A stretch of DNA of 64,000 bases from Ascidiella aspersa (Eukaryota), in contig OZ004610.1 in assembly GCA_963924565.1 (NCBI GenBank), positions 6,324,001 through 6,388,000 on the forward strand, given 5' to 3'. This document shows, piece by piece, positions 21,279-59,628 of the stretch. The translations under genes and the position numbers were made by a program. The notes under the pieces were generated by a model. It was not told the DNA's origin, ran no database searches, and saw only the letters and a list, made by a program, of their open reading frames with translations. Each line of letters starts with the position of its first letter. Within the stretch, counting starts at the first letter, position 1.

Positions 21279-21623
21279 ATGGCCAAGGGTGCCGGCTACC
21301 TTCTGAACAGCGTCAACCAAAAGAAGATTCGCGAAAAGTCGAACAAGAATCGTGCCAGCGTCGACACCTCGTGTCCGCAACGACCCGAAATCACAAGCCG
21401 CGCGACGTCGCTGTCGAGCACATCAACACCACGAAATCGCGGATGCCGGCATTGCAGAAGAAATCACGGCGACCGGGATCTCGGACTCGAATGCCTGCAA
21501 AACATGTGCGTAAAGTGCATCGGGTGCGACAAGATACTGCGCATGCGCAGCTCGGGAGAAAACGGAACGACTCGGATCACTGTAAGGTCTTGCTGCGCCG
21601 ATTACAGGGGCCGGTTGGCGAAG
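21279..21623 (+). CDS. Candidate alternative first exon C, Cys-rich (115 aa)
   Basis: GC-rich 130-aa ORF with two phase-0 donors (ACT|gtaagg after 21581, AAG|gtaaaa after 21623). Confidence 0.55.
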
Positions 21624-22524
21624 GTAAAACTAACTAGCTCGAAGATCATCGTTGCTTTCAAGATATTTTAACGAATAGATTGAATCATTTCGTTGCGAGC
21701 CAAATCGTACATTTGGCGTTTAAAAGCTTGACGTTGCACAAAAAAAGCCTTTTTGATTTAAAGTTAATAAATGTCTAAACATTAATTTCAGATGAAATAT
21801 TTGTGTTTGATAACAAAAAGCTACAATTAGTAGCCTTAGACCAAAGGCCCAAAAAAAACAAAAGTCATAAATCAAGATTCTAAGTATTTTTTTAAATATT
21901 AGGTTTTACACCCAATTGATCTCTATACTGTGCTCTGAGTGGAGTAAAGTTTTTTTTCTCTACGCATAACATGGCGACAATTTGCTTTTAGGCATCTTTA
22001 ATTTTGTAAAAGTTTTTGTACAGTGTTTGCTTTATCGTGAGAAACAATGCTTTATAAAACAAATAACATACGCATTATTCAAAGCATTGGCACAAAACAC
22101 CTCCAACAAACTTTAAATGTCTGAATTTAAATCTTACAAGAAAGTCAACTTTTATACACAACACGCATTTCATCTTATTTTGTATGGCTGGACAGCCCTT
22201 ATATGCTGGTTTCCAATGTTGCGTCCGTATATTACTGAACACATGGTGAACAAAAAGTCTCTCAACACTGCTTTATCATTTACGAGAATACGACGAGATT
22301 GCAATCACATTTTACTGAATCACAAAAGCCCTTCTAGCTCGCCCTTCGTGGAGAATTGTATTTTTAGCCAGCAAAGTGTACCGAGCGCGCCGAAGCGTAA
22401 CATTTGGAAAAGGCGGGATAAATTGTATAGCCCGCGTTGTACCTGGTTTAGCTGTTGACTGACTTGGGCTCACCTAACATAGCATTTACGCTCTTCAAAG
22501 CGTTGCGATTTCTTCAGTCTAGTA

Positions 22525-34045: not shown

Positions 34046-36324
34046 GTAAGATTGCAATCATACCTTATCTGCACAATTTCCAGTTTGCTCGTGGGAAACG
34101 TCACAACACTTTACTGAAAATCGCTGTCGTTATATAATCGAGCATTTTTCGTTATGCGTTTCTCAGTCGAACAACGGATATATATATCTGAGAAACAATA
34201 CAACCGACTATGCAAAAATTTCACACTCAACATTTTTAAAAGGGCAAGTTTTTCATTTGTTTAATTTATTAACTGCTTGACAGGTGTTTATAAGACGTAC
34301 TTTAATTTATGTTTCAAGTCTTACCTTTATCTGACGAGCATGGTTGTACAAAACACTCATAATTTGTATTTAGGAAATATCATTTGTATTTTAAATACGC
34401 TATATAATTAACCTGCTTTAGAAAACTGTCAAATTTGATGGAAAACCAAATGCAGAACGCATATCTTCTACCCTGGATTTTTTTTGCAAAATACAGCATA
34501 GTTATATTCTTGTCTTGAATGGGCACGTCAATAAAAAAAGGAATATGAAATAAGACAATTTTGTCTATTTTGTAAAGGTTGTTTGTTGCCTCTGGGTTTA
34601 CTGCAATTCCTGTAGGTCAAAAAAGATAACATGCCTATTCCAGATAGGCCGAAGCAATTTTATATAGCAAAGCCTATTATGCGCTTGATGGCTCTTTTAC
34701 CGTTGGCGCTCAATAATTCAGTTTGTTCAATTATTTATGCTTTCTCTTTTCCGTTGACAAATGATAAATGCGACTCGTAGTTTATTATGCGCGTGTATGC
34801 ATTGCGCAACAGCAAAACATAGCTGGAAAGTTGAAATAGGTTCGTGTTGGATTGCGTCTATAAGTCTTGTAACGAACGCCGGGCCAACTCTTGACATTTC
34901 ACTTTTCGTTAACGAGAAATTAATTCCCTGATGATATGAACTTAGGGTGGTAATAGTGTTAACCTTTAGTCGAATCTGTAATACGCTTTTATGCAATATT
35001 TTTTTTAACTGCAGGGCATGTTCTTTACATTAAGGCATTTTCTCAACAAACACTTTATTCGTTGCAAATAGCACCGCAGTTGTTTTGCTTGTATTGCAGG
35101 TTTATTAATTATGGCACTCAATAAACAAAAAAAAATTGCCAAATTTTTGGGACACCAATTTATACGCATGAGATGTATAACGGTCGGTCAAGGACAACAA
35201 TGTTGCCGATAGAATTCCGATGTGAAAGCAAAAAATATTTAGCTGACAGTAATGGGCAACAAAGTTCCGCCAACACGTTATGGTCCACTGTACAGTCACG
35301 AATTCCAAATTAAGTGTTTTGGCAAATCAAATGGAGAGGATTGAAACTCGTGTCCACTTGAGGTTGAAGTGCGTCCAAAACATTGGACGGGAAAACCAAT
35401 TCGTTGTTGAGCTTTTAATTGGCCTTTCGTTATGTTTGGGTTTTTGAGGTTCGTTTAAGCCATACAGATATCGGCAATAAACCAAAATATTGATTATTTT
35501 TTAAAAACTATACTTGAAATATAATTAGTGTTGGTTTGAATTGCTTTTTTATTATGCGTTTAGAATAAATAAACTGTAATTCCTTGACCACACCTGCAAA
35601 TGTTTAAACTATTTTTTTCATATTATTATGGCGTTCATGAGTTTTCTAAGCACCTTTACAGTAAATCTCAAATGAGGTCTGTTAAGTCATGTACGATAAT
35701 ATAAGGGCTCGTTTTGTATTTTTCCAAATTTTGTTTTAAAAAAGCTAATGTGCTGTCGGCTGTTAATTCACTACTTTCTGAGAAGTATACTTTAAAGGCA
35801 GAAAACGTTGGGTTTGATCGCCAACCATGCCCAAAATACCCTTAGCAATTTAGTTTAGGCTCGGGTATCGATCCGACGATGTCCAGTAATGTCGGACATC
35901 TTTAAATTATATAGTCCCCCATAAAATGCCCTGGGCGTCAAATTATTAAGCTTGGCCTGAAAAGTTGCCCCTATAAACGGGAGACTGTGATCGATTTGTT
36001 TCACGATTCAGTGGGCGTGGTTTTCAGCCTCGAAGCGCAGCCCTGTTTATGCCACTTATAAAGAGGCCTGGTATCTTTGGGAAAAAGCCTTCGGAAACAT
36101 GCACACACATTTGTGTGTTAACTACAACTGTGATCTGGCCCTTCTGAAGCTGCTTTTTACCAACGATTACTGCATACGTATAACTAGTACACCGCGATGG
36201 CTTTTCGGTGTACTATATTTGTACTACACATCTAATTTTTTACCGAGATTTAAATGACCTTGAAAGTGGCGATATACCACAGTAAAACCCAAATGCGAAA
36301 CAAAAACTCGACTTCTCTTTAAAG

Positions 36325-36510
36325 GACGGCTTCACGCCTCTCGCGGTCGCCCTTCAAGAGAACAAGGACAAGGTCGTTCAGCTGCTTCTTGACAATGACG
36401 TCAAGGGCCGGGTGAAGCTGCCAGCGTTACACATCGCTGCGCGCAAGGATGACGTCAAGGCCGCCGCCCTGCTGCTGCAGAACGACAACACCGCCGACAC
36501 TACGTCACGG
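36325..36510 (+). CDS. ANK1/2/3: Ankyrin exon, repeats 5-6
   Basis: [11 protein letters not shown]...[23 protein letters not shown]...; 186 nt. Confidence 0.96.
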
Positions 36511-37121
36511 GTAAAGTCCCCTTTGCGTGTAATGGTGGCAAACCTGTAGAAACCGCGATTTTGTTTTTCCGTTTCTGGGATTTTGTTTTTCAATTGGATA
36601 ACATTTTTGTTTTTGGGCCAGCCTTTTTAAGTTCTGCCCCTTATCATAACACTTGTGACCATAGGCGCCGAACTTTTAAAATTTCAGTGCGTTTTTTAAA
36701 GATCAGTACAAAATGCTAACACCAACTAAGCGTAACGACACTTTGGAAACCCATTTAGACCATCCGTATTATCATTAAAGCAATGCGTTGTGTAAGGCAC
36801 CTTGTAAAATTGATTTTAAGAAGAAAAAACATTTGCTGTGTTTGTTTGAATCTGTGCTATCTTTATTAATTCGAAAACATCTAAAATGCCGCATGCTTTT
36901 TTCAATGGAATAAGCATTTTGGCCTAAACCGTTATGTCTTTAGATCTAGTTTTACAATTTTTGTTTTATTTAACACATTTGCGTCTTTGCTGTTTCAGTC
37001 ATTCGTGTATACTAGGCTTGGAATGTTCAACACACAACGTGTCGTTTGGCTAACCTACGATTTTTTGTTTTGTTTTTTATTTGCTGCTTGGTGCATGGCG
37101 TGTCCTTGGTAATCTCGACAG

Positions 37122-37145
37122 ATGATGGTCAACCGAACTACGGAG
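37122..37145 (+). CDS. ANK1/2/3: 24-nt microexon MMVNRTTE
   Basis: cag|ATGATGGTCAACCGAACTACGGAG|gtaaag, phase 0/0; same peptide and position as the vertebrate ANK2 microexon as recalled. Confidence 0.92.
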
Positions 37146-37244
37146 GTAAAGTTACATTCACACCGTTTAGTTTTTGTTTCTATTTTTCACGTGTATTTCA
37201 ATCATGGTCAGCTGTATGTTGTAGTCACGCTAATACCTGCACGT

Positions 37245-37713
37245 CAGGGATGGCGAACCACTGACCCACGGGTCAAAAAGTGACTCATTACAGATATTCA
37301 GTGGCCCACTTGGCTTTTTAAAAATAACAAATATAAACATTTTTTTTATAATAATAACGTTTACCCTAAATATTTATAATAAAACATTCATTGATAAAAT
37401 CATGAAAACCATGTTGAAATACAATCCTTATACTTATTTCATGGGATTTCTGCCAAACTCGTTTGACTCAATAAAAATATTCCTAGTAAATTGGTTAACT
37501 TTCAGTTAAAAAAACAAACATTTTTTTAAAATGAAATTGAATCGTATCAATAAATTTAGGGATTTCCAGTCGAGGATAAACTTGTAGAGAATGCGCAGTA
37601 GCGAGTTTGGCGGTAATTTAACCGAATTTAACGTAATGTATAATCCGCCTTTTTCATGAATCAAGGTCTCGTTCTTGACACACGCAATAAATAAAAAAGG
37701 TTCGCTATCCCTG
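37245..37713. mobile_element. hAT-type MITE 100 nt downstream of the microexon
   Basis: TIRs cagggatggcgaacc / ggttcgctatccctg. Confidence 0.7.
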
Positions 37714-37947
37714 ACCTATATGTGTATATTTCAAAGCACTTATATTGAAGTCATCCGGTTATGAAGAACGTTTTTATATATGCGCGTTGTAAAACGATTT
37801 TTATTGCAACAAGATTTTTTTCAAAAGTCATTGGTTTGAATAATACTAAATTTGAATTGCTTTCTTGCACATAAGAATTCCAAATGTTTTACATTATAAA
37901 ATATTATTTTTTTTTATTTTTTAAACCAACTGTTTGATACATTCCAG

Positions 37948-38046
37948 AGCGGCTTCACTGCTTTGCACATCGCTGCCCACTACGGAAACGTGAATGTGGC
38001 AACTCTTCTGCTCAACAGAGGGGCGTCGGTGGATTTCAAGGCCAGG
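37948..38046 (+). CDS. ANK1/2/3: Ankyrin exon, repeat 7
   Basis: [33 protein letters not shown]. Confidence 0.97.
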
Positions 38047-38474
38047 GTAAGCTAAATAGACCAGTGAAGTTTGTAACAACCAACAGTTGGAAAGATGCGC
38101 TATATGTAGTTTCTCAAACAACATTTAAGTGCATTTTTGTTTAATCAAATACATGCCTTTGTAATTACTTCTCAATTATTTGAAAAGAGAATTTAGTCTG
38201 CGTTTCTGATTGTCTACGTCACAATGCTTTATGCCTTAAGATCACTTTATGCACTTGTCGACCTAATGTACCTAATGTACATTTTAGTTTAATTAAGTTT
38301 TTGTGGCGCAAAAACGAAAGTACATAGGCAGGGATCTGTGTGACAAGATTCTTCCATGTTTTTTTTAACAAATATATCTATCAAAACGAATTTATAAAAC
38401 TTTGTATATTCTATGTTAAATATCGTGTCGCCAAAAACGAAATAAACGTAAAAACTCAAAAACTGTTTTCTCAG

Positions 38475-38675
38475 AACGGAATCACACCAATGCACGTGGC
38501 TGCCAAAAGGGGGAATACCCGCTTTTGCGCGCTTCTACTGGACCGGAACGGGCGTCCGGACGCCTGTACCAGGGACGGTCTTATCCCCATCCACTGCGCG
38601 GCCAGGTCCGGACACCTTCCAATCGTCAAGCTCTTCTTGGATTGCGAGAACACGCCCAAGTTTGCCAGGACCAAG
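38475..38675 (+). CDS. ANK1/2/3: Ankyrin exon, repeats 8-9
   Basis: NGITPMHVAAKRGN...HCAARSGH...ARTK; 201 nt. Confidence 0.96.
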
Positions 38676-38754
38676 GTAAAGTTAGCGTCTATAACATTTC
38701 GGTTAAGGGTTGAGAGGTACTAGGTATTAGGTACTTTCACGCTCATAACCAAAT

Positions 38755-38957
38755 TGCCTAAGTCATTTTTTCCAGATTTTTAAAGTTTTTGCTTCAGTCA
38801 CTCCTTGTTACCATCCCCATCCATAGAAAAAGTACTTGGGTCATTTTCCATGCGCTTGTGCAATAAAATGACTTACGCATTTTTTCTATGGATGGGGATG
38901 GTAACAAGGAGTGGCTTAGACAAAAACTCTGAAAATCTGGAAAAAATGACTTAGGCA
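38755..38957. mobile_element. Near-perfect palindromic MITE of about 200 bp
   Basis: tgcctaagtcattttttccagatttt ... aaaatctggaaaaaatgacttaggca; internal arms also complementary. Confidence 0.75.
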
Positions 38958-58551: not shown

Positions 58552-58650
58552 CCTACTGCATAGCCCCAGGAAGCTGCCCCCTCTCACCGAGGGTGAGGGT
58601 ATCGCGGCGAGGGTGATTCAGATCGGACCCAAGTCGACCCGGTTTTTAGG
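58552..58650 (+). CDS. ANK1/2/3: 99-nt cassette exon duplicating a ZU5-A segment
   Basis: LLHSPRKLPPLTEGEGIAARVIQIGPKSTRFLG; tag/gtaatt, phase 2/2. Confidence 0.88.
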
Positions 58651-59628
58651 GTAATTCCCCTTTCCTTTGGGAAGGTTGTGTGACGTGTCTTGTCCCCCGT
58701 TGCGTGGCGTGATGTCATTGGTTGTTTATCGGTGGTGGTAATCTGCGTTCCGTTTGTTTTCATAAATTCAGGAAAATTCAAATTTTTTTCGAAAATTGTT
58801 GACGGTGGGTCGGTTTGAATCCACTAGTATTTTGTAATTTTCAAATAAATTTGGCGACATGTGCATCTTTTGTTTTAACTAATTTGTAAGTTTTACTAGT
58901 TTACCAATAAACTAACGGCCTACTATTATTTTTTACCACTAACCTAGGAAAAATTAGATTTCTTTTTCACGGGAAATTAAAAAATAATTTTGTTTTTTGT
59001 TTTCTGCTATATGCATAATGGTCTATGTGTGTGATGTATTTGTCCCTTGTCATATAATTCCTGTTGATTTGATGCTCGCCAATTTGACGCGAAAGGTGCA
59101 TCGTGTATCAAACCGTTTAAATTGAAGATGACCTTTTTGTCAAATTCGTGGTTTTACACGTAATTGTTCATCATTAATTTCAAATAATTTGCGTGATATC
59201 AAACCCTACAGTAAACTCATGCAAAAAAAAGTTTGAGTCACCATTCTTCTTAGCATAACTATATCTATTGACTGATTGGCCAAACACCAGATTTTTCACG
59301 ACTGAATACTGTAATGTCTGAATGGACCCATCCAATTTTACATGTGCGTTTGATCATCAATTACGCAACATGCAATGTACCCACAATAAACAAAACAGAA
59401 AAAAAAATTATCCTTATGTGTTTACCAATAACGCCCCAAGCCTTTGTTATTTTTTAACTGATTACTGCATTGTATGACTAAACACAAATCTATTTTACAA
59501 GTGCTCCTAATGAAATATCCAATGACACATGATTCAATAAACCCATACTATATATAATCATAAATGGATCAGTCTACATTTTTCGCTTAGTGTTATAAAA
59601 AAACATAATGCTTAACCCCTAACCGCAG

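What the first reader, a model, noticed from the sequence alone, without database searches (positions are those of the whole stretch)
37050..37151. Deeply conserved 24-nt ANK2-type microexon with neural microexon regulatory architecture
Seen: an in-frame 24-nt exon MMVNRTTE between repeats 6 and 7, which the ORF track misses. Upstream order is branch point ctaac (37050), U-rich tract (37061-37080), UGC UGC (37082-37087), UGCAUG (37092-37097), then AG. Known: vertebrate ANK2 has MMVNRTTE here (from memory); UGC motifs near the 3' splice site mark SRRM3/4 (eMIC)-dependent microexons and UGCAUG is the Rbfox site. Inference: this microexon and its control predate vertebrates and are more conserved than the flanking repeats.
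Basis: partly seen in the sequence, partly recalled or inferred. Interest (0 to 1): 0.75.

Follow-up and report, generated by a model that had tools for sequence, protein, structure and literature searches.

The report
Conserved 24-base ankyrin microexon in sea squirt
A tiny 24-base exon in a sea squirt's single ankyrin gene encodes the same eight amino acids as an optional exon of vertebrate ANK2 and ANK3, so the exon predates vertebrates, but whether it is nerve-specific here could not be tested.

Summary
Window 37122-37145 (+) is an AG...GT-flanked, phase-0, 24-nt exon encoding MMVNRTTE. It lies between the 186-nt exon for ankyrin repeats 5-6 and the 99-nt exon for repeat 7.

The genome is an ascidian with one ankyrin gene. 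The same eight residues occupy the same junction in Clavelina lepadiformis RefSeq models (8 of 8 isoforms seen) and in many vertebrate ANK2/ANK3 models. Vertebrate models occur both with and without the insert. ANK1 lacks it. Molluscs carry a related insert (GGLVNDTTK) at this junction.

So "predates vertebrates" is supported. "More conserved than the flanks" is not significant (8/8 against 74/95).

The upstream intron runs CUAAC, U-tract, three UGC, then AG, inside a 104-nt AG-free zone. This fits the published code for SRRM3/4 (eMIC)-dependent exons and is rare among random AG sites, but each single feature also occurs at constitutive exons of this gene. An upstream UGCAUG would, by the recalled position rule, predict Rbfox repression.

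No RNA run exists for this organism, so inclusion, alternative use and neural bias remain untested. The scan has noted other microexons in this genome, but not this one.

Verdict: a real ortholog of an annotated exon, of moderate interest.

The parts
36325..36510 (+). Upstream constitutive exon: 186 nt, ankyrin repeats 5-6 (DGFTPLAV...[10 protein letters not shown]), phase 0, donor GT at 36511.
   Evidence: Pfam Ank E=2.7e-09. Aligns to AnkB chain 4rlv_A residues 199-259. Same 186-nt size as mouse Ank3 exon 6, 'ANK repeat 5, 6' (PMC4449188 Table 2).
37050..37054 (+). CTAAC, candidate branch point, 72 nt upstream of the exon start.
   Evidence: One search places CTAAY at -72, inside the AG-free zone. 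CUAAY is the branch-point motif named for eMIC exons in PMC8797185 section 10. Its use as a branch point is inferred.
37061..37080 (+). Distal U-rich tract (17 T in 20 nt). It is U/G-rich, not the UCUC type.
   Evidence: 9 of 3178 AG sites in the window have a tract this T-rich within 100 nt, and the repeat-7 exon has one too.
37082..37087 (+). UGCUGC, two UGC motifs between the U-tract and the acceptor. A third UGC lies inside the UGCAUG.
   Evidence: 3 TGC in -50..-3 against 0.70 expected. 95 of 3178 AG sites reach 3. Among 13 other ankyrin exons only one reaches 3.
37092..37097 (+). UGCAUG (Rbfox-type hexamer), starting 30 nt upstream of the exon.
   Evidence: One of 5 on the + strand of the 64-kb window. 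0 of 13 other ankyrin exons have one within 150 nt upstream. None in the 300 nt downstream.
37120..37121 (+). Acceptor AG, with a pyrimidine-poor proximal context (12 of 20 pyrimidines) and a 104-nt AG-free zone upstream.
37122..37145 (+). The 24-nt microexon, ATGATGGTCAACCGAACTACGGAG = MMVNRTTE, phase 0-0.
   Evidence: Identical peptide at the same junction in Clavelina lepadiformis and in vertebrate ANK2/ANK3 models. No difference from the window inside it in a second individual's contigs.
37146..37151 (+). Donor GTAAAG (GAG|GUAAAG).
   Evidence: read directly. No scoring tool was available.
37948..38046 (+). Downstream constitutive exon: 99 nt, ankyrin repeat 7 ([33 protein letters not shown]).
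   Evidence: Pfam Ank E=3.7e-10. Aligns to 4rlv_A residues 269-301.

Best explanation
The 24-nt stretch is a genuine coding microexon of the single ankyrin gene of an ascidian (sea squirt). It is orthologous to the 24-nt cassette exon that vertebrate ANK2 and ANK3 carry between the exon for repeats 5-6 and the exon for repeat 7.

When included, it adds eight residues (MMVNRTTE) to the finger loop joining repeats 6 and 7. That loop lies where target-binding site 1 (repeats 2-6) meets site 2 on the inner groove of the membrane-binding domain. Inclusion would therefore most likely tune which membrane partners bind, or the geometry between the two sites (inferred).

Its 3' splice site is built like a regulated microexon: a CUAAC branch point 72 nt upstream, a distal U-tract, three UGC motifs, then a pyrimidine-poor stretch before the AG, all inside a 104-nt AG-free zone, followed by a good donor. 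My reading is that the exon is recognised poorly by default and needs an activator that binds the UGC region. In bilaterians the known activator of this type is the eMIC domain of Srrm234/SRRM3/4. The UGCAUG at -30 offers Rbfox a repressive handle.

Shown: the exon's form, position, frame and orthology, and the motif layout.
Inferred: that it is spliced in this species (about 0.9), that it is alternative rather than constitutive (about 0.6), and that inclusion is neural and eMIC-dependent (about 0.35).
For: Form and frame.

Single ankyrin gene: 1 match in the 308.6-Mb genome. Ciona also has a lone ankyrin gene (passages of PMC5135030).

Orthology:
- 17 of 66 inspected ankyrin representatives carry MMVNRTTE exactly at this junction. 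They include Clavelina lepadiformis XP_076804273.1 and Spea bombifrons ankyrin-2.
- 8 of 8 Clavelina isoforms in that cluster carry it.
- Named ANK3 models of skate, zebrafish and killifish carry it, and frog ANK3 models carry LVVNRTTE or VMVNRTTE.
- AnkB chains 4rlv_A, 5y4d_A and 4rly_A have an 8-residue gap between the two exon-equivalents, while ANK1 chain 7tw3_G has none.
- The 186-nt plus 99-nt exon structure matches mouse Ank3.

Cassette behaviour in vertebrates: Spea ANK2 models 9 with and 2 without, of 11. Among 119 mostly mammal and bird ANK2 models, 38 with, 70 without and 11 lacking the junction. The mouse heart Ank3 exon table lists no exon between exons 6 and 7.

Related insert in molluscs, (S/T/D)GGLVNDTTK in Babylonia, Octopus, Saccostrea and Mytilus, absent from 6 of 6 Arion transcripts.

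Architecture: compared with the published code (PMC8797185 section 10; passages of bioRxiv 10.1101/2024.09.17.613571).

Loop position and binding sites: passages of PMC4358367.

A second individual differs from the window at only 2 places in 37036-37274, neither in the exon nor in a motif.
Against: - There is no RNA evidence for this species. Both runs that hold the locus are genomic contigs that cover the introns and show no splice joints.
- 0 of 110 short protein fragments related to the upstream exon cross the junction.
- All 8 Clavelina models seen include the exon, which fits constitutive use in ascidians as well as it fits alternative use.
- Each architectural feature also occurs at constitutive exons of the same gene: AG-free zones of 70, 125 and 133 nt, a 17/20 T-tract before repeat 7, and 3 TGC before repeat 18.
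- The U-tract lacks the UCUC element of the published bipartite enhancer.
- Pfam SRRM_C (the eMIC region) gave only sub-threshold hits in the genome (best 18.9 bits against a cut-off of 27), and Fox-1_C gave none. Both searches are weak across introns.
- Low polymorphism around the exon is matched by equally low values beside the neighbouring constitutive exon.
Confidence: 0.75

Rival explanations
1. The exon is real and ancient but constitutive in ascidians. Alternative use arose, or was kept, only in vertebrates and molluscs, and the upstream motifs are ordinary splice-site furniture.
For: 8 of 8 Clavelina isoform models seen include it. Long AG-free zones, distal T-tracts and UGC counts like these also occur at constitutive exons of this gene. 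There is no skipped form in any ascidian sequence I could reach.
Against: The combination of features is unique among 14 exons of the gene and among 3178 AG sites, though with post-hoc thresholds. The proximal pyrimidine content ties for lowest in the gene at 0.6. In both other lineages with data the insert is optional. Only isoforms X4-X11 of Clavelina were seen; X1-X3 were not.
Confidence: 0.3
2. The exon is alternative but is controlled mainly by repression, by Rbfox at the upstream UGCAUG and/or MBNL at the UGCU motifs. It would then be skipped where those factors are high (for example muscle) rather than switched on by an eMIC activator in neurons.
For: UGCAUG lies 30 nt upstream, between the U-tract and the AG, and none lies downstream. 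By the position rule for Rbfox, which I recall rather than tested, upstream binding favours skipping. UGCUGCUU contains two YGCY (UGCU) sites. A muscleblind gene with its own regulated microexon was reported in this genome by an earlier follow-up (s1-788661, not checked by me). The mouse heart Ank3 table has no such exon.
Against: No expression data. Fox-1_C was not found in a six-frame search (inconclusive). One hexamer is thin evidence. This reading does not exclude eMIC activation.
Confidence: 0.2
3. It is a chance open frame in an intron, or a dead relic, that is never spliced in.
For: No RNA evidence for this species.
Against: 8/8 identity to the peptide at the same junction in other chordates. 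Intact AG and GT and a preserved frame. The exon is included in RefSeq models of a related ascidian whose repeat exons are 87% identical (169/195) to the window's. No difference from the window inside it in a second individual.
Confidence: 0.02

Closest known systems
The 24-nt cassette exon of vertebrate ANK2 (ankyrin-B) and ANK3 (ankyrin-G) between ANK repeats 6 and 7.
   Same: Same position between a 186-nt exon and a 99-nt exon, same length and phase, and an identical peptide MMVNRTTE. The 8 residues are present in AnkB crystal constructs.
   Different: Here it lies in the single pre-duplication ankyrin gene of an ascidian. In vertebrate models it is clearly optional; here that is unknown. 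I found no paper that describes this exon. It may be listed in supplementary tables that I could not open.
SRRM3/4 (eMIC)-dependent neuronal microexons, for example the 12-nt ANK2 microexon near S901 (PMC12148930).
   Same: Length within 3-27 nt. UGC motifs lie between a distal branch point and pyrimidine tract and the AG. Long AG-free zone and a CUAAY branch point, matching the code in PMC8797185 section 10 and bioRxiv 10.1101/2024.09.17.613571.
   Different: That ANK2 microexon is a different exon, in the linker after the repeats. For the exon here, neural bias and SRRM dependence are untested, the U-tract is not the UCUC type, and an eMIC-coding gene was not demonstrated in this genome.
Ank3 microexon E35a (PMC12713133).
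   Same: A conserved ankyrin microexon shared by ANK2 and ANK3 but absent from ANK1, which is the same paralogue pattern.
   Different: E35a lies between the UPA and death domains and is described as conserved within vertebrates. The exon here lies in the membrane-binding repeats and reaches tunicates.
Molluscan ankyrin insert (S/T/D)GGLVNDTTK at the repeat 6-7 junction.
   Same: Same junction, similar length (10 aa against 8) and a shared core VN-x-TT. It is optional among mollusc models: 14 of 15 Saccostrea isoforms carry it, one has DFHSVG instead, and 0 of 6 Arion transcripts have any insert.
   Different: Only 4 of 8 aligned residues are identical. I could not see mollusc genomic DNA, so a separate microexon is inferred from isoform differences, and common descent is not proven.

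Membership tests
Canonical ankyrin gene (ANK1/2/3, Ank, unc-44 type) | N-terminal array of ANK repeats collinear with known ankyrins | tested here: met
   tblastn of Clavelina ankyrin P0005 gives collinear hits for residues 36-1390 across window 30829-63561. Exons score as Pfam Ank. The best PDB hits are ankyrin-B and ankyrin-R.
Canonical ankyrin gene (ANK1/2/3, Ank, unc-44 type) | ZU5-ZU5-UPA supermodule and death domain after the repeats | tested here: inconclusive
   Window exons match P0005 residues 940-1390. P0005 carries Pfam ZU5, UPA_2 and Death. I did not scan the window's own exons for these domains, and the death domain lies beyond the window.
ANK2/ANK3 repeat 6-7 cassette exon (orthology) | Lies in the intron between the 186-nt repeat 5-6 exon and the 99-nt repeat 7 exon | tested here: met
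   Mouse Ank3 exon table. PDB chain coordinates.
ANK2/ANK3 repeat 6-7 cassette exon (orthology) | 24 nt, phase 0-0, peptide xxVNRTTE | tested here: met
   8/8 identical to Spea ANK2 and to skate and fish ANK3 models.
ANK2/ANK3 repeat 6-7 cassette exon (orthology) | Optional inclusion (both isoforms exist) | not testable with these tools
   Vertebrate models show both forms. For this species no RNA run is indexed, and the Clavelina models seen all include it.
SRRM3/4 (eMIC)-dependent neural microexon | Exon of 3-27 nt with UGC between the branch point or pyrimidine tract and the AG | tested here: met
   24 nt, with UGC starting at -40, -37 and -30. Criterion taken.
SRRM3/4 (eMIC)-dependent neural microexon | Distal strong branch point and pyrimidine tract, long AG-free zone, weak proximal 3' splice site | tested here: met
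   CUAAC at -72, U-tract at about -61 to -42, a 104-nt AG-free zone, and 0.6 proximal pyrimidines. This is not exclusive: 3 constitutive exons of the gene have AG-free zones of 70 nt or more.
SRRM3/4 (eMIC)-dependent neural microexon | Neural-enriched inclusion | not testable with these tools
   No RNA runs.
SRRM3/4 (eMIC)-dependent neural microexon | Dependence on an eMIC-bearing Srrm protein encoded in the genome | tested here: inconclusive
   Pfam SRRM_C gave no hit at E<=0.01. The best sub-threshold hit is a 55-aa ORF ending in a stop, at G000:C4:343362-343526, 18.9 bits against a cut-off of 27, and SRRM_C is its only Pfam match, E=0.0023. My filter found no RS-rich ORF in the 10 kb upstream.
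Rbfox-regulated exon | (U)GCAUG within a few hundred nt of the exon | tested here: met
   One, starting at -30. None in 300 nt downstream. Chance of one within 100 nt upstream of a random AG is 28 of 3178.
Rbfox-regulated exon | An Rbfox gene in the genome and a response to it | tested here: inconclusive
   Pfam Fox-1_C gave 0 candidates. The domain is short and likely split by introns. The RRM_1 positive control worked, with 106 matches. The response itself is not testable.

The most novel reading that the evidence does not exclude
The repeat 6-7 finger-loop insert is one ancestral bilaterian alternative microexon. It would be homologous between chordates (xxVNRTTE) and molluscs (GGLVNDTTK) and already under eMIC-type, UGC-dependent neural control in the chordate ancestor. 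That would make it one of the very few neural microexons conserved across phyla, against the published picture that fly and mammal eMIC programmes share only four exons in equivalent positions (PMC8797185).
Probability: 0.25. Interest if true: 0.6.

Novelty: new member of a known kind. Interest (0 to 1): 0.35.

Why it matters
Neural microexon programmes are strongly conserved within vertebrates but are reported to share almost no individual exons with flies (PMC8797185, passages). Here a microexon is letter-for-letter identical between a tunicate and vertebrates, in the single pre-duplication ankyrin gene, with a related insert in molluscs. That gives a concrete, easily assayed case for asking three questions: when an individual microexon and its control region arose, whether ANK1 lost it after the vertebrate duplications, and what an 8-residue extension of the finger loop between binding sites 1 and 2 does to ankyrin's choice of membrane partners. 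As it stands, the result is an orthology finding from gene structure and protein models, not a demonstration of regulation.

Tried and rejected
RNA evidence:
- The look-up of sequencing runs listed only two runs. Read laying showed both to be genomic contigs covering the introns, with no splice joints. Neither tool can be called again.
- A search for short protein fragments with the upstream exon returned 120 listed hits. I inspected the 110 with new ids (P0429-P0538); the other 10 had already been seen. None crosses into the microexon or into repeat 7, and they read into the intron, so they are genomic.

Cross-species intron comparison:
The orthologous intron of Clavelina could therefore not be fetched.
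- I considered scanning metagenome contigs with a degenerate pattern for the exon. I left it out because matches could be vertebrate or human contamination.

Wider taxon sampling:
- Two region searches with the Clavelina protein were swamped by vertebrate isoforms. No second named tunicate appeared.
- They still served for isoform counts. The one search count (112 of 119 with the exact peptide) is biased, because the search words included the microexon.

Trans-factors:
- SRRM_C and Fox-1_C searches were inconclusive.
- My scan for RS-rich ORFs upstream of the SRRM_C-like ORF found none.

Structure:
- AlphaFold2 on the 192-aa fragment P0095 without an alignment gave mean pLDDT 58. I draw nothing from it.

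Polymorphism as a sign of constraint:
- The second individual differs at 2 places in 239 nt around the exon, against about 3.4% further into the intron.
- The flanks of the neighbouring constitutive exon are equally clean, and only contigs at least 95% alike are laid. I rejected this as evidence of special constraint.

Rfam found nothing at the site.

Literature:
- The peptide occurs in 0 papers.
- Searches combining microexon with ANK2, SRRM4, eMIC, ankyrin-G, Ciona or tunicate led only to other ankyrin microexons.
- Supplements were closed and I did not open any. Exon tables in supplements of the microexon atlases may list this exon.
Full report
THE OBSERVATION

The + strand reads ...ctcgacAG|ATGATGGTCAACCGAACTACGGAG|GTaaag. 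The exon is 37122-37145 and translates to MMVNRTTE, with the acceptor AG at 37120-37121 and the donor GT at 37146-37147.

The exon before it is 36325-36510: 186 nt, DGFTPLAV...[10 protein letters not shown], with donor GT at 36511. The exon after it is 37948-38046: 99 nt, [14 protein letters not shown]...FKAR. All three are in phase 0, so both inclusion and skipping keep the frame.

- ctaac at 37050-37054
- a U-rich tract at 37061-37080
- TGCTGC at 37082-37087
- TGCATG at 37092-37097

The window contains no N.

THE GENE AND THE ORGANISM

The flanking exons score as ankyrin repeats (Pfam Ank, E=2.7e-09 and 3.7e-10). Their best solved relatives are ankyrin-B and ankyrin-R.

A search of 1.84 billion representative proteins with the 62-aa upstream exon gave canonical ankyrins. 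The closest is P0005, Clavelina lepadiformis XP_076804273.1, an ascidian protein.

P0005 aligns collinearly to window 30829-63561 over its residues 36-1390. Over four repeat exons the window is 169/195 identical to Clavelina and 140/195 identical to frog ANK2. The window therefore comes from another ascidian, not from Clavelina itself. No tool named the organism. Earlier notes of this scan also call this genome ascidian.

The genome, 308.6 Mb in 75 contigs, gave one match to the upstream exon. This agrees with the lone ankyrin gene reported for Ciona (passages of PMC5135030).

ORTHOLOGY OF THE EXON

I inspected the repeat 6-7 junction in 66 of the 68 best representatives. I left out P0060 and P0067, whose best match was not the full repeat 5-6 stretch. 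The result:
- 17 carry MMVNRTTE exactly there.
- 4 carry (S/T/D)GGLVNDTTK.
- 41 go straight from repeat 6 to repeat 7.
- 4 are odd: one has VNETTK, one has a probable read-through insert, and two are aberrant models.

Names:
- The MMVNRTTE set that I looked up includes Clavelina, Spea bombifrons ankyrin-2 and a fish ankyrin-3-like protein.
- The GGLVNDTTK set is molluscan: Babylonia, Octopus, Saccostrea and Mytilus.
- Representatives without an insert include four echinoderms, a beetle, a moth, a priapulid and two flukes. Each of these is one isoform only, so absence from the gene is not shown.

Named ANK3 models of skate, zebrafish and killifish carry MMVNRTTE. Two frog genera carry LVVNRTTE or VMVNRTTE. 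An unnamed 192-aa fragment from an ENA assembly (P0095) carries LIVNRTTE. The invariant core is VNRTTE.

Independent of gene models, three AnkB crystal constructs have exactly 8 residues between the stretches that align to the two flanking exons, and ANK1 has none:

| Chain | Molecule | Upstream exon aligns to | Downstream exon aligns to |
|---|---|---|---|
| 4rlv_A | AnkB | 199-259 | 269-301 |
| 5y4d_A | AnkB | 200-260 | 270-302 |
| 4rly_A | AnkB | 164-224 | 234-266 |
| 7tw3_G | ANK1 | 143-203 | 205-235 |

In each chain the upstream alignment stops one residue short of the exon's end (query residues 1-61 of 62). Counting that residue leaves the 8-residue gap in AnkB and none in ANK1.

The exon structure is shared too. 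Table 2 of PMC4449188 (seen as a passage) lists mouse Ank3 exon 6 as 186 bp, 'ANK Repeat 5, 6', followed by exon 7 beginning ag/AGTGG.

IS IT OPTIONAL?

In vertebrate models, yes:
- 9 of 11 Spea ANK2 isoforms have it and 2 lack it.
- Among the 119 hits other than the query (mostly mammal and bird ANK2), 38 have it, 70 lack it and 11 have no such junction.
- The mouse heart Ank3 exon table lists nothing between exons 6 and 7.

In molluscs the insert also varies. 14 of the 15 listed Saccostrea isoforms have it and one has DFHSVG instead. 0 of 6 Arion transcripts have any insert.

In ascidians I saw only inclusion: 8 of 8 Clavelina isoforms (X4-X11).

For the window's own species there is no RNA. 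Both runs that hold the locus are genomic contigs, and none of the 110 related short fragments I inspected crosses the junction.

THE CONTROL REGION

Published descriptions:
- Passages of bioRxiv 10.1101/2024.09.17.613571 describe the branch point and pyrimidine tract as lying farther from the AG. This makes room for a bipartite UCUCUC...UGC enhancer, with a UGC between branch point and AG in 74-79% of SRRM3/4-dependent microexons.

What the window shows: CUAAC at -72, a 17/20 T-tract centred near -50, UGC at -40, -37 and -30, a pyrimidine-poor last 20 nt (0.6), and a 104-nt AG-free zone. The order matches the published code. The UCUC element is missing.

Control 1, against 13 other ankyrin exons in the window:
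- The microexon is the only one with TGCATG within 150 nt upstream.
- It ties for most TGC (3, shared with repeat 18).
- It ties for the strongest T-tract (shared with repeat 7).
- It is third for AG-free zone (104 nt against 133 and 125).

Control 2, against all 3178 AG sites on the + strand:

| Feature | AG sites with it |
|---|---|
| AG-free zone of 100 nt or more | 24 |
| 3 or more TGC | 95 |
| T-tract of 17/20 or more | 9 |
| TGCATG within 100 nt upstream | 28 |
| Combined set | 1 (this site) |

The thresholds for the combined set were chosen after seeing the site. The layout is therefore unusual and fits a regulated microexon, but it is not diagnostic.

The UGCAUG lies upstream. By the position rule for Rbfox, which I recall and did not test, that predicts repression. 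No UGCAUG lies in the 300 nt downstream.

The trans-factors:
- A six-frame search for the eMIC region (Pfam SRRM_C) gave only sub-threshold hits. The best is a 55-aa ORF ending in a stop on the same chromosome-scale contig, about 6 Mb away: 18.9 bits against a cut-off of 27, and SRRM_C is its only Pfam match.
- Fox-1_C gave nothing.
- The RRM_1 control worked.
- Both negatives are weak, because short domains split by introns are easily missed.

WHAT THE EIGHT RESIDUES WOULD DO

In the AnkB repeat structure, finger loops join consecutive repeats. Together with the inner helices they line the target-binding groove. Site 1 comprises five repeats after the capping repeat 1, and sites 2 and 3 comprise four repeats each (passages of PMC4358367). 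The insert therefore lengthens the finger loop at the boundary of sites 1 and 2. An effect on partner choice or groove geometry is my inference.

A single-sequence AlphaFold2 model of P0095 was too poor to use (mean pLDDT 58).

CONSERVATION RELATIVE TO THE FLANKS

Against Spea ANK2 the upstream exon is 44/62 identical, the microexon 8/8 and the downstream exon 30/33. With flanks at 74/95, eight matches in a row have probability of about 0.14 by my arithmetic. 'More conserved than the flanking repeats' is not established.

WHAT IS KNOWN

The ankyrin microexons in the papers I could read are different exons:
- a 12-nt ANK2 exon near S901, regulated by MBNL and SRRM (passages of PMC12148930);
- Ank3 E35a, between the UPA and death domains (passages of PMC12713133).

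The peptide occurs in no held paper. The exon is nevertheless annotated in many public gene models, including an ascidian's. This is a new member of a known kind.

Its interest lies in depth of conservation. [quoted passage not shown]

The scan has 28 notes mentioning microexons in this genome. One is a muscleblind microexon that a follow-up judged 'a good example rather than a discovery'. None concerns this exon.

LIMITS

- Supplements were closed and not opened.
- The spliced model was never joined. All searches were exon by exon.

Noticed in passing
window 37244-37320: A dispersed repeat starts about 100 nt downstream of the microexon. A 106-nt query gave 40 scored matches (of 190 candidates) across the genome, 39 of them other copies at 83-88% identity. 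Read depth there is more than 3000 against about 60-150 around it.
   Followed up: partly
window 36101-36201 and 38727-38930: Two more very high-copy stretches in the flanking introns, with depth above 10,000 in both runs. The second overlaps a sub-threshold Rfam match to a miRNA-precursor family (MIR6425, 46.7 bits against a gathering score of 142, 38794-38918), so it is probably a hairpin-forming transposon rather than a miRNA.
   Followed up: no
G000:C4:343362-343526 (L003:1486-1650, + strand): A 55-aa ORF ending in a stop codon whose only Pfam match is SRRM_C, the C-terminal region of SRRM3/4 (E=0.0023, 18.9 bits, below the cut-off of 27). It is a candidate for the terminal eMIC exon of the ascidian Srrm gene. 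My filter found no RS-rich ORF in the 10 kb upstream.
   Followed up: partly
proteins P0171 versus P0158-P0170 (Saccostrea cucullata ankyrin-2-like isoforms): One oyster isoform has DFHSVG at the repeat 6-7 junction where 14 others have TGGLVNDTTK. This suggests two mutually exclusive small exons at this site in bivalves.
   Followed up: no
proteins P0038, P0045, P0066, P0044: Some vertebrate-type ankyrin models extend the insert to MMVNRTTENGK or MMVNRTTEQ. Of these only P0038 was named, a fish ankyrin-3-like protein. This would need an alternative donor or a second tiny exon after the 24-nt one.
   Followed up: no
window 37409-37452 and 38104-38281: The second individual (run X2) lacks 44 nt in the intron after the microexon and has 176 other letters in place of 178 nt in the next intron. 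Overall it differs at about 3.4% of positions over 37246-38680, which is high heterozygosity.
   Followed up: no
window 58552-58650 and 21279-21671: Other first-reader notes on this same window: a 99-nt ZU5-region cassette exon said to be shared with ANK2/ANK3, and a Cys-rich possible N-terminal module. The tblastn hit of P0005 residues 1020-1051 at 58556-58651 shows that the first is a coding exon matched in the Clavelina protein.
   Followed up: partly
protein P0095 (unnamed, ENA assembly, 192 aa): A fragment spanning repeats 4-9 in one open frame, with LIVNRTTE at the junction. It was called on a 5.5-kb contig by a gene caller that presumably does not splice. It is therefore either transcript-derived or from a genome that has lost these introns. 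The organism is unknown, and it is 119/195 identical to the window's exons.
   Followed up: partly
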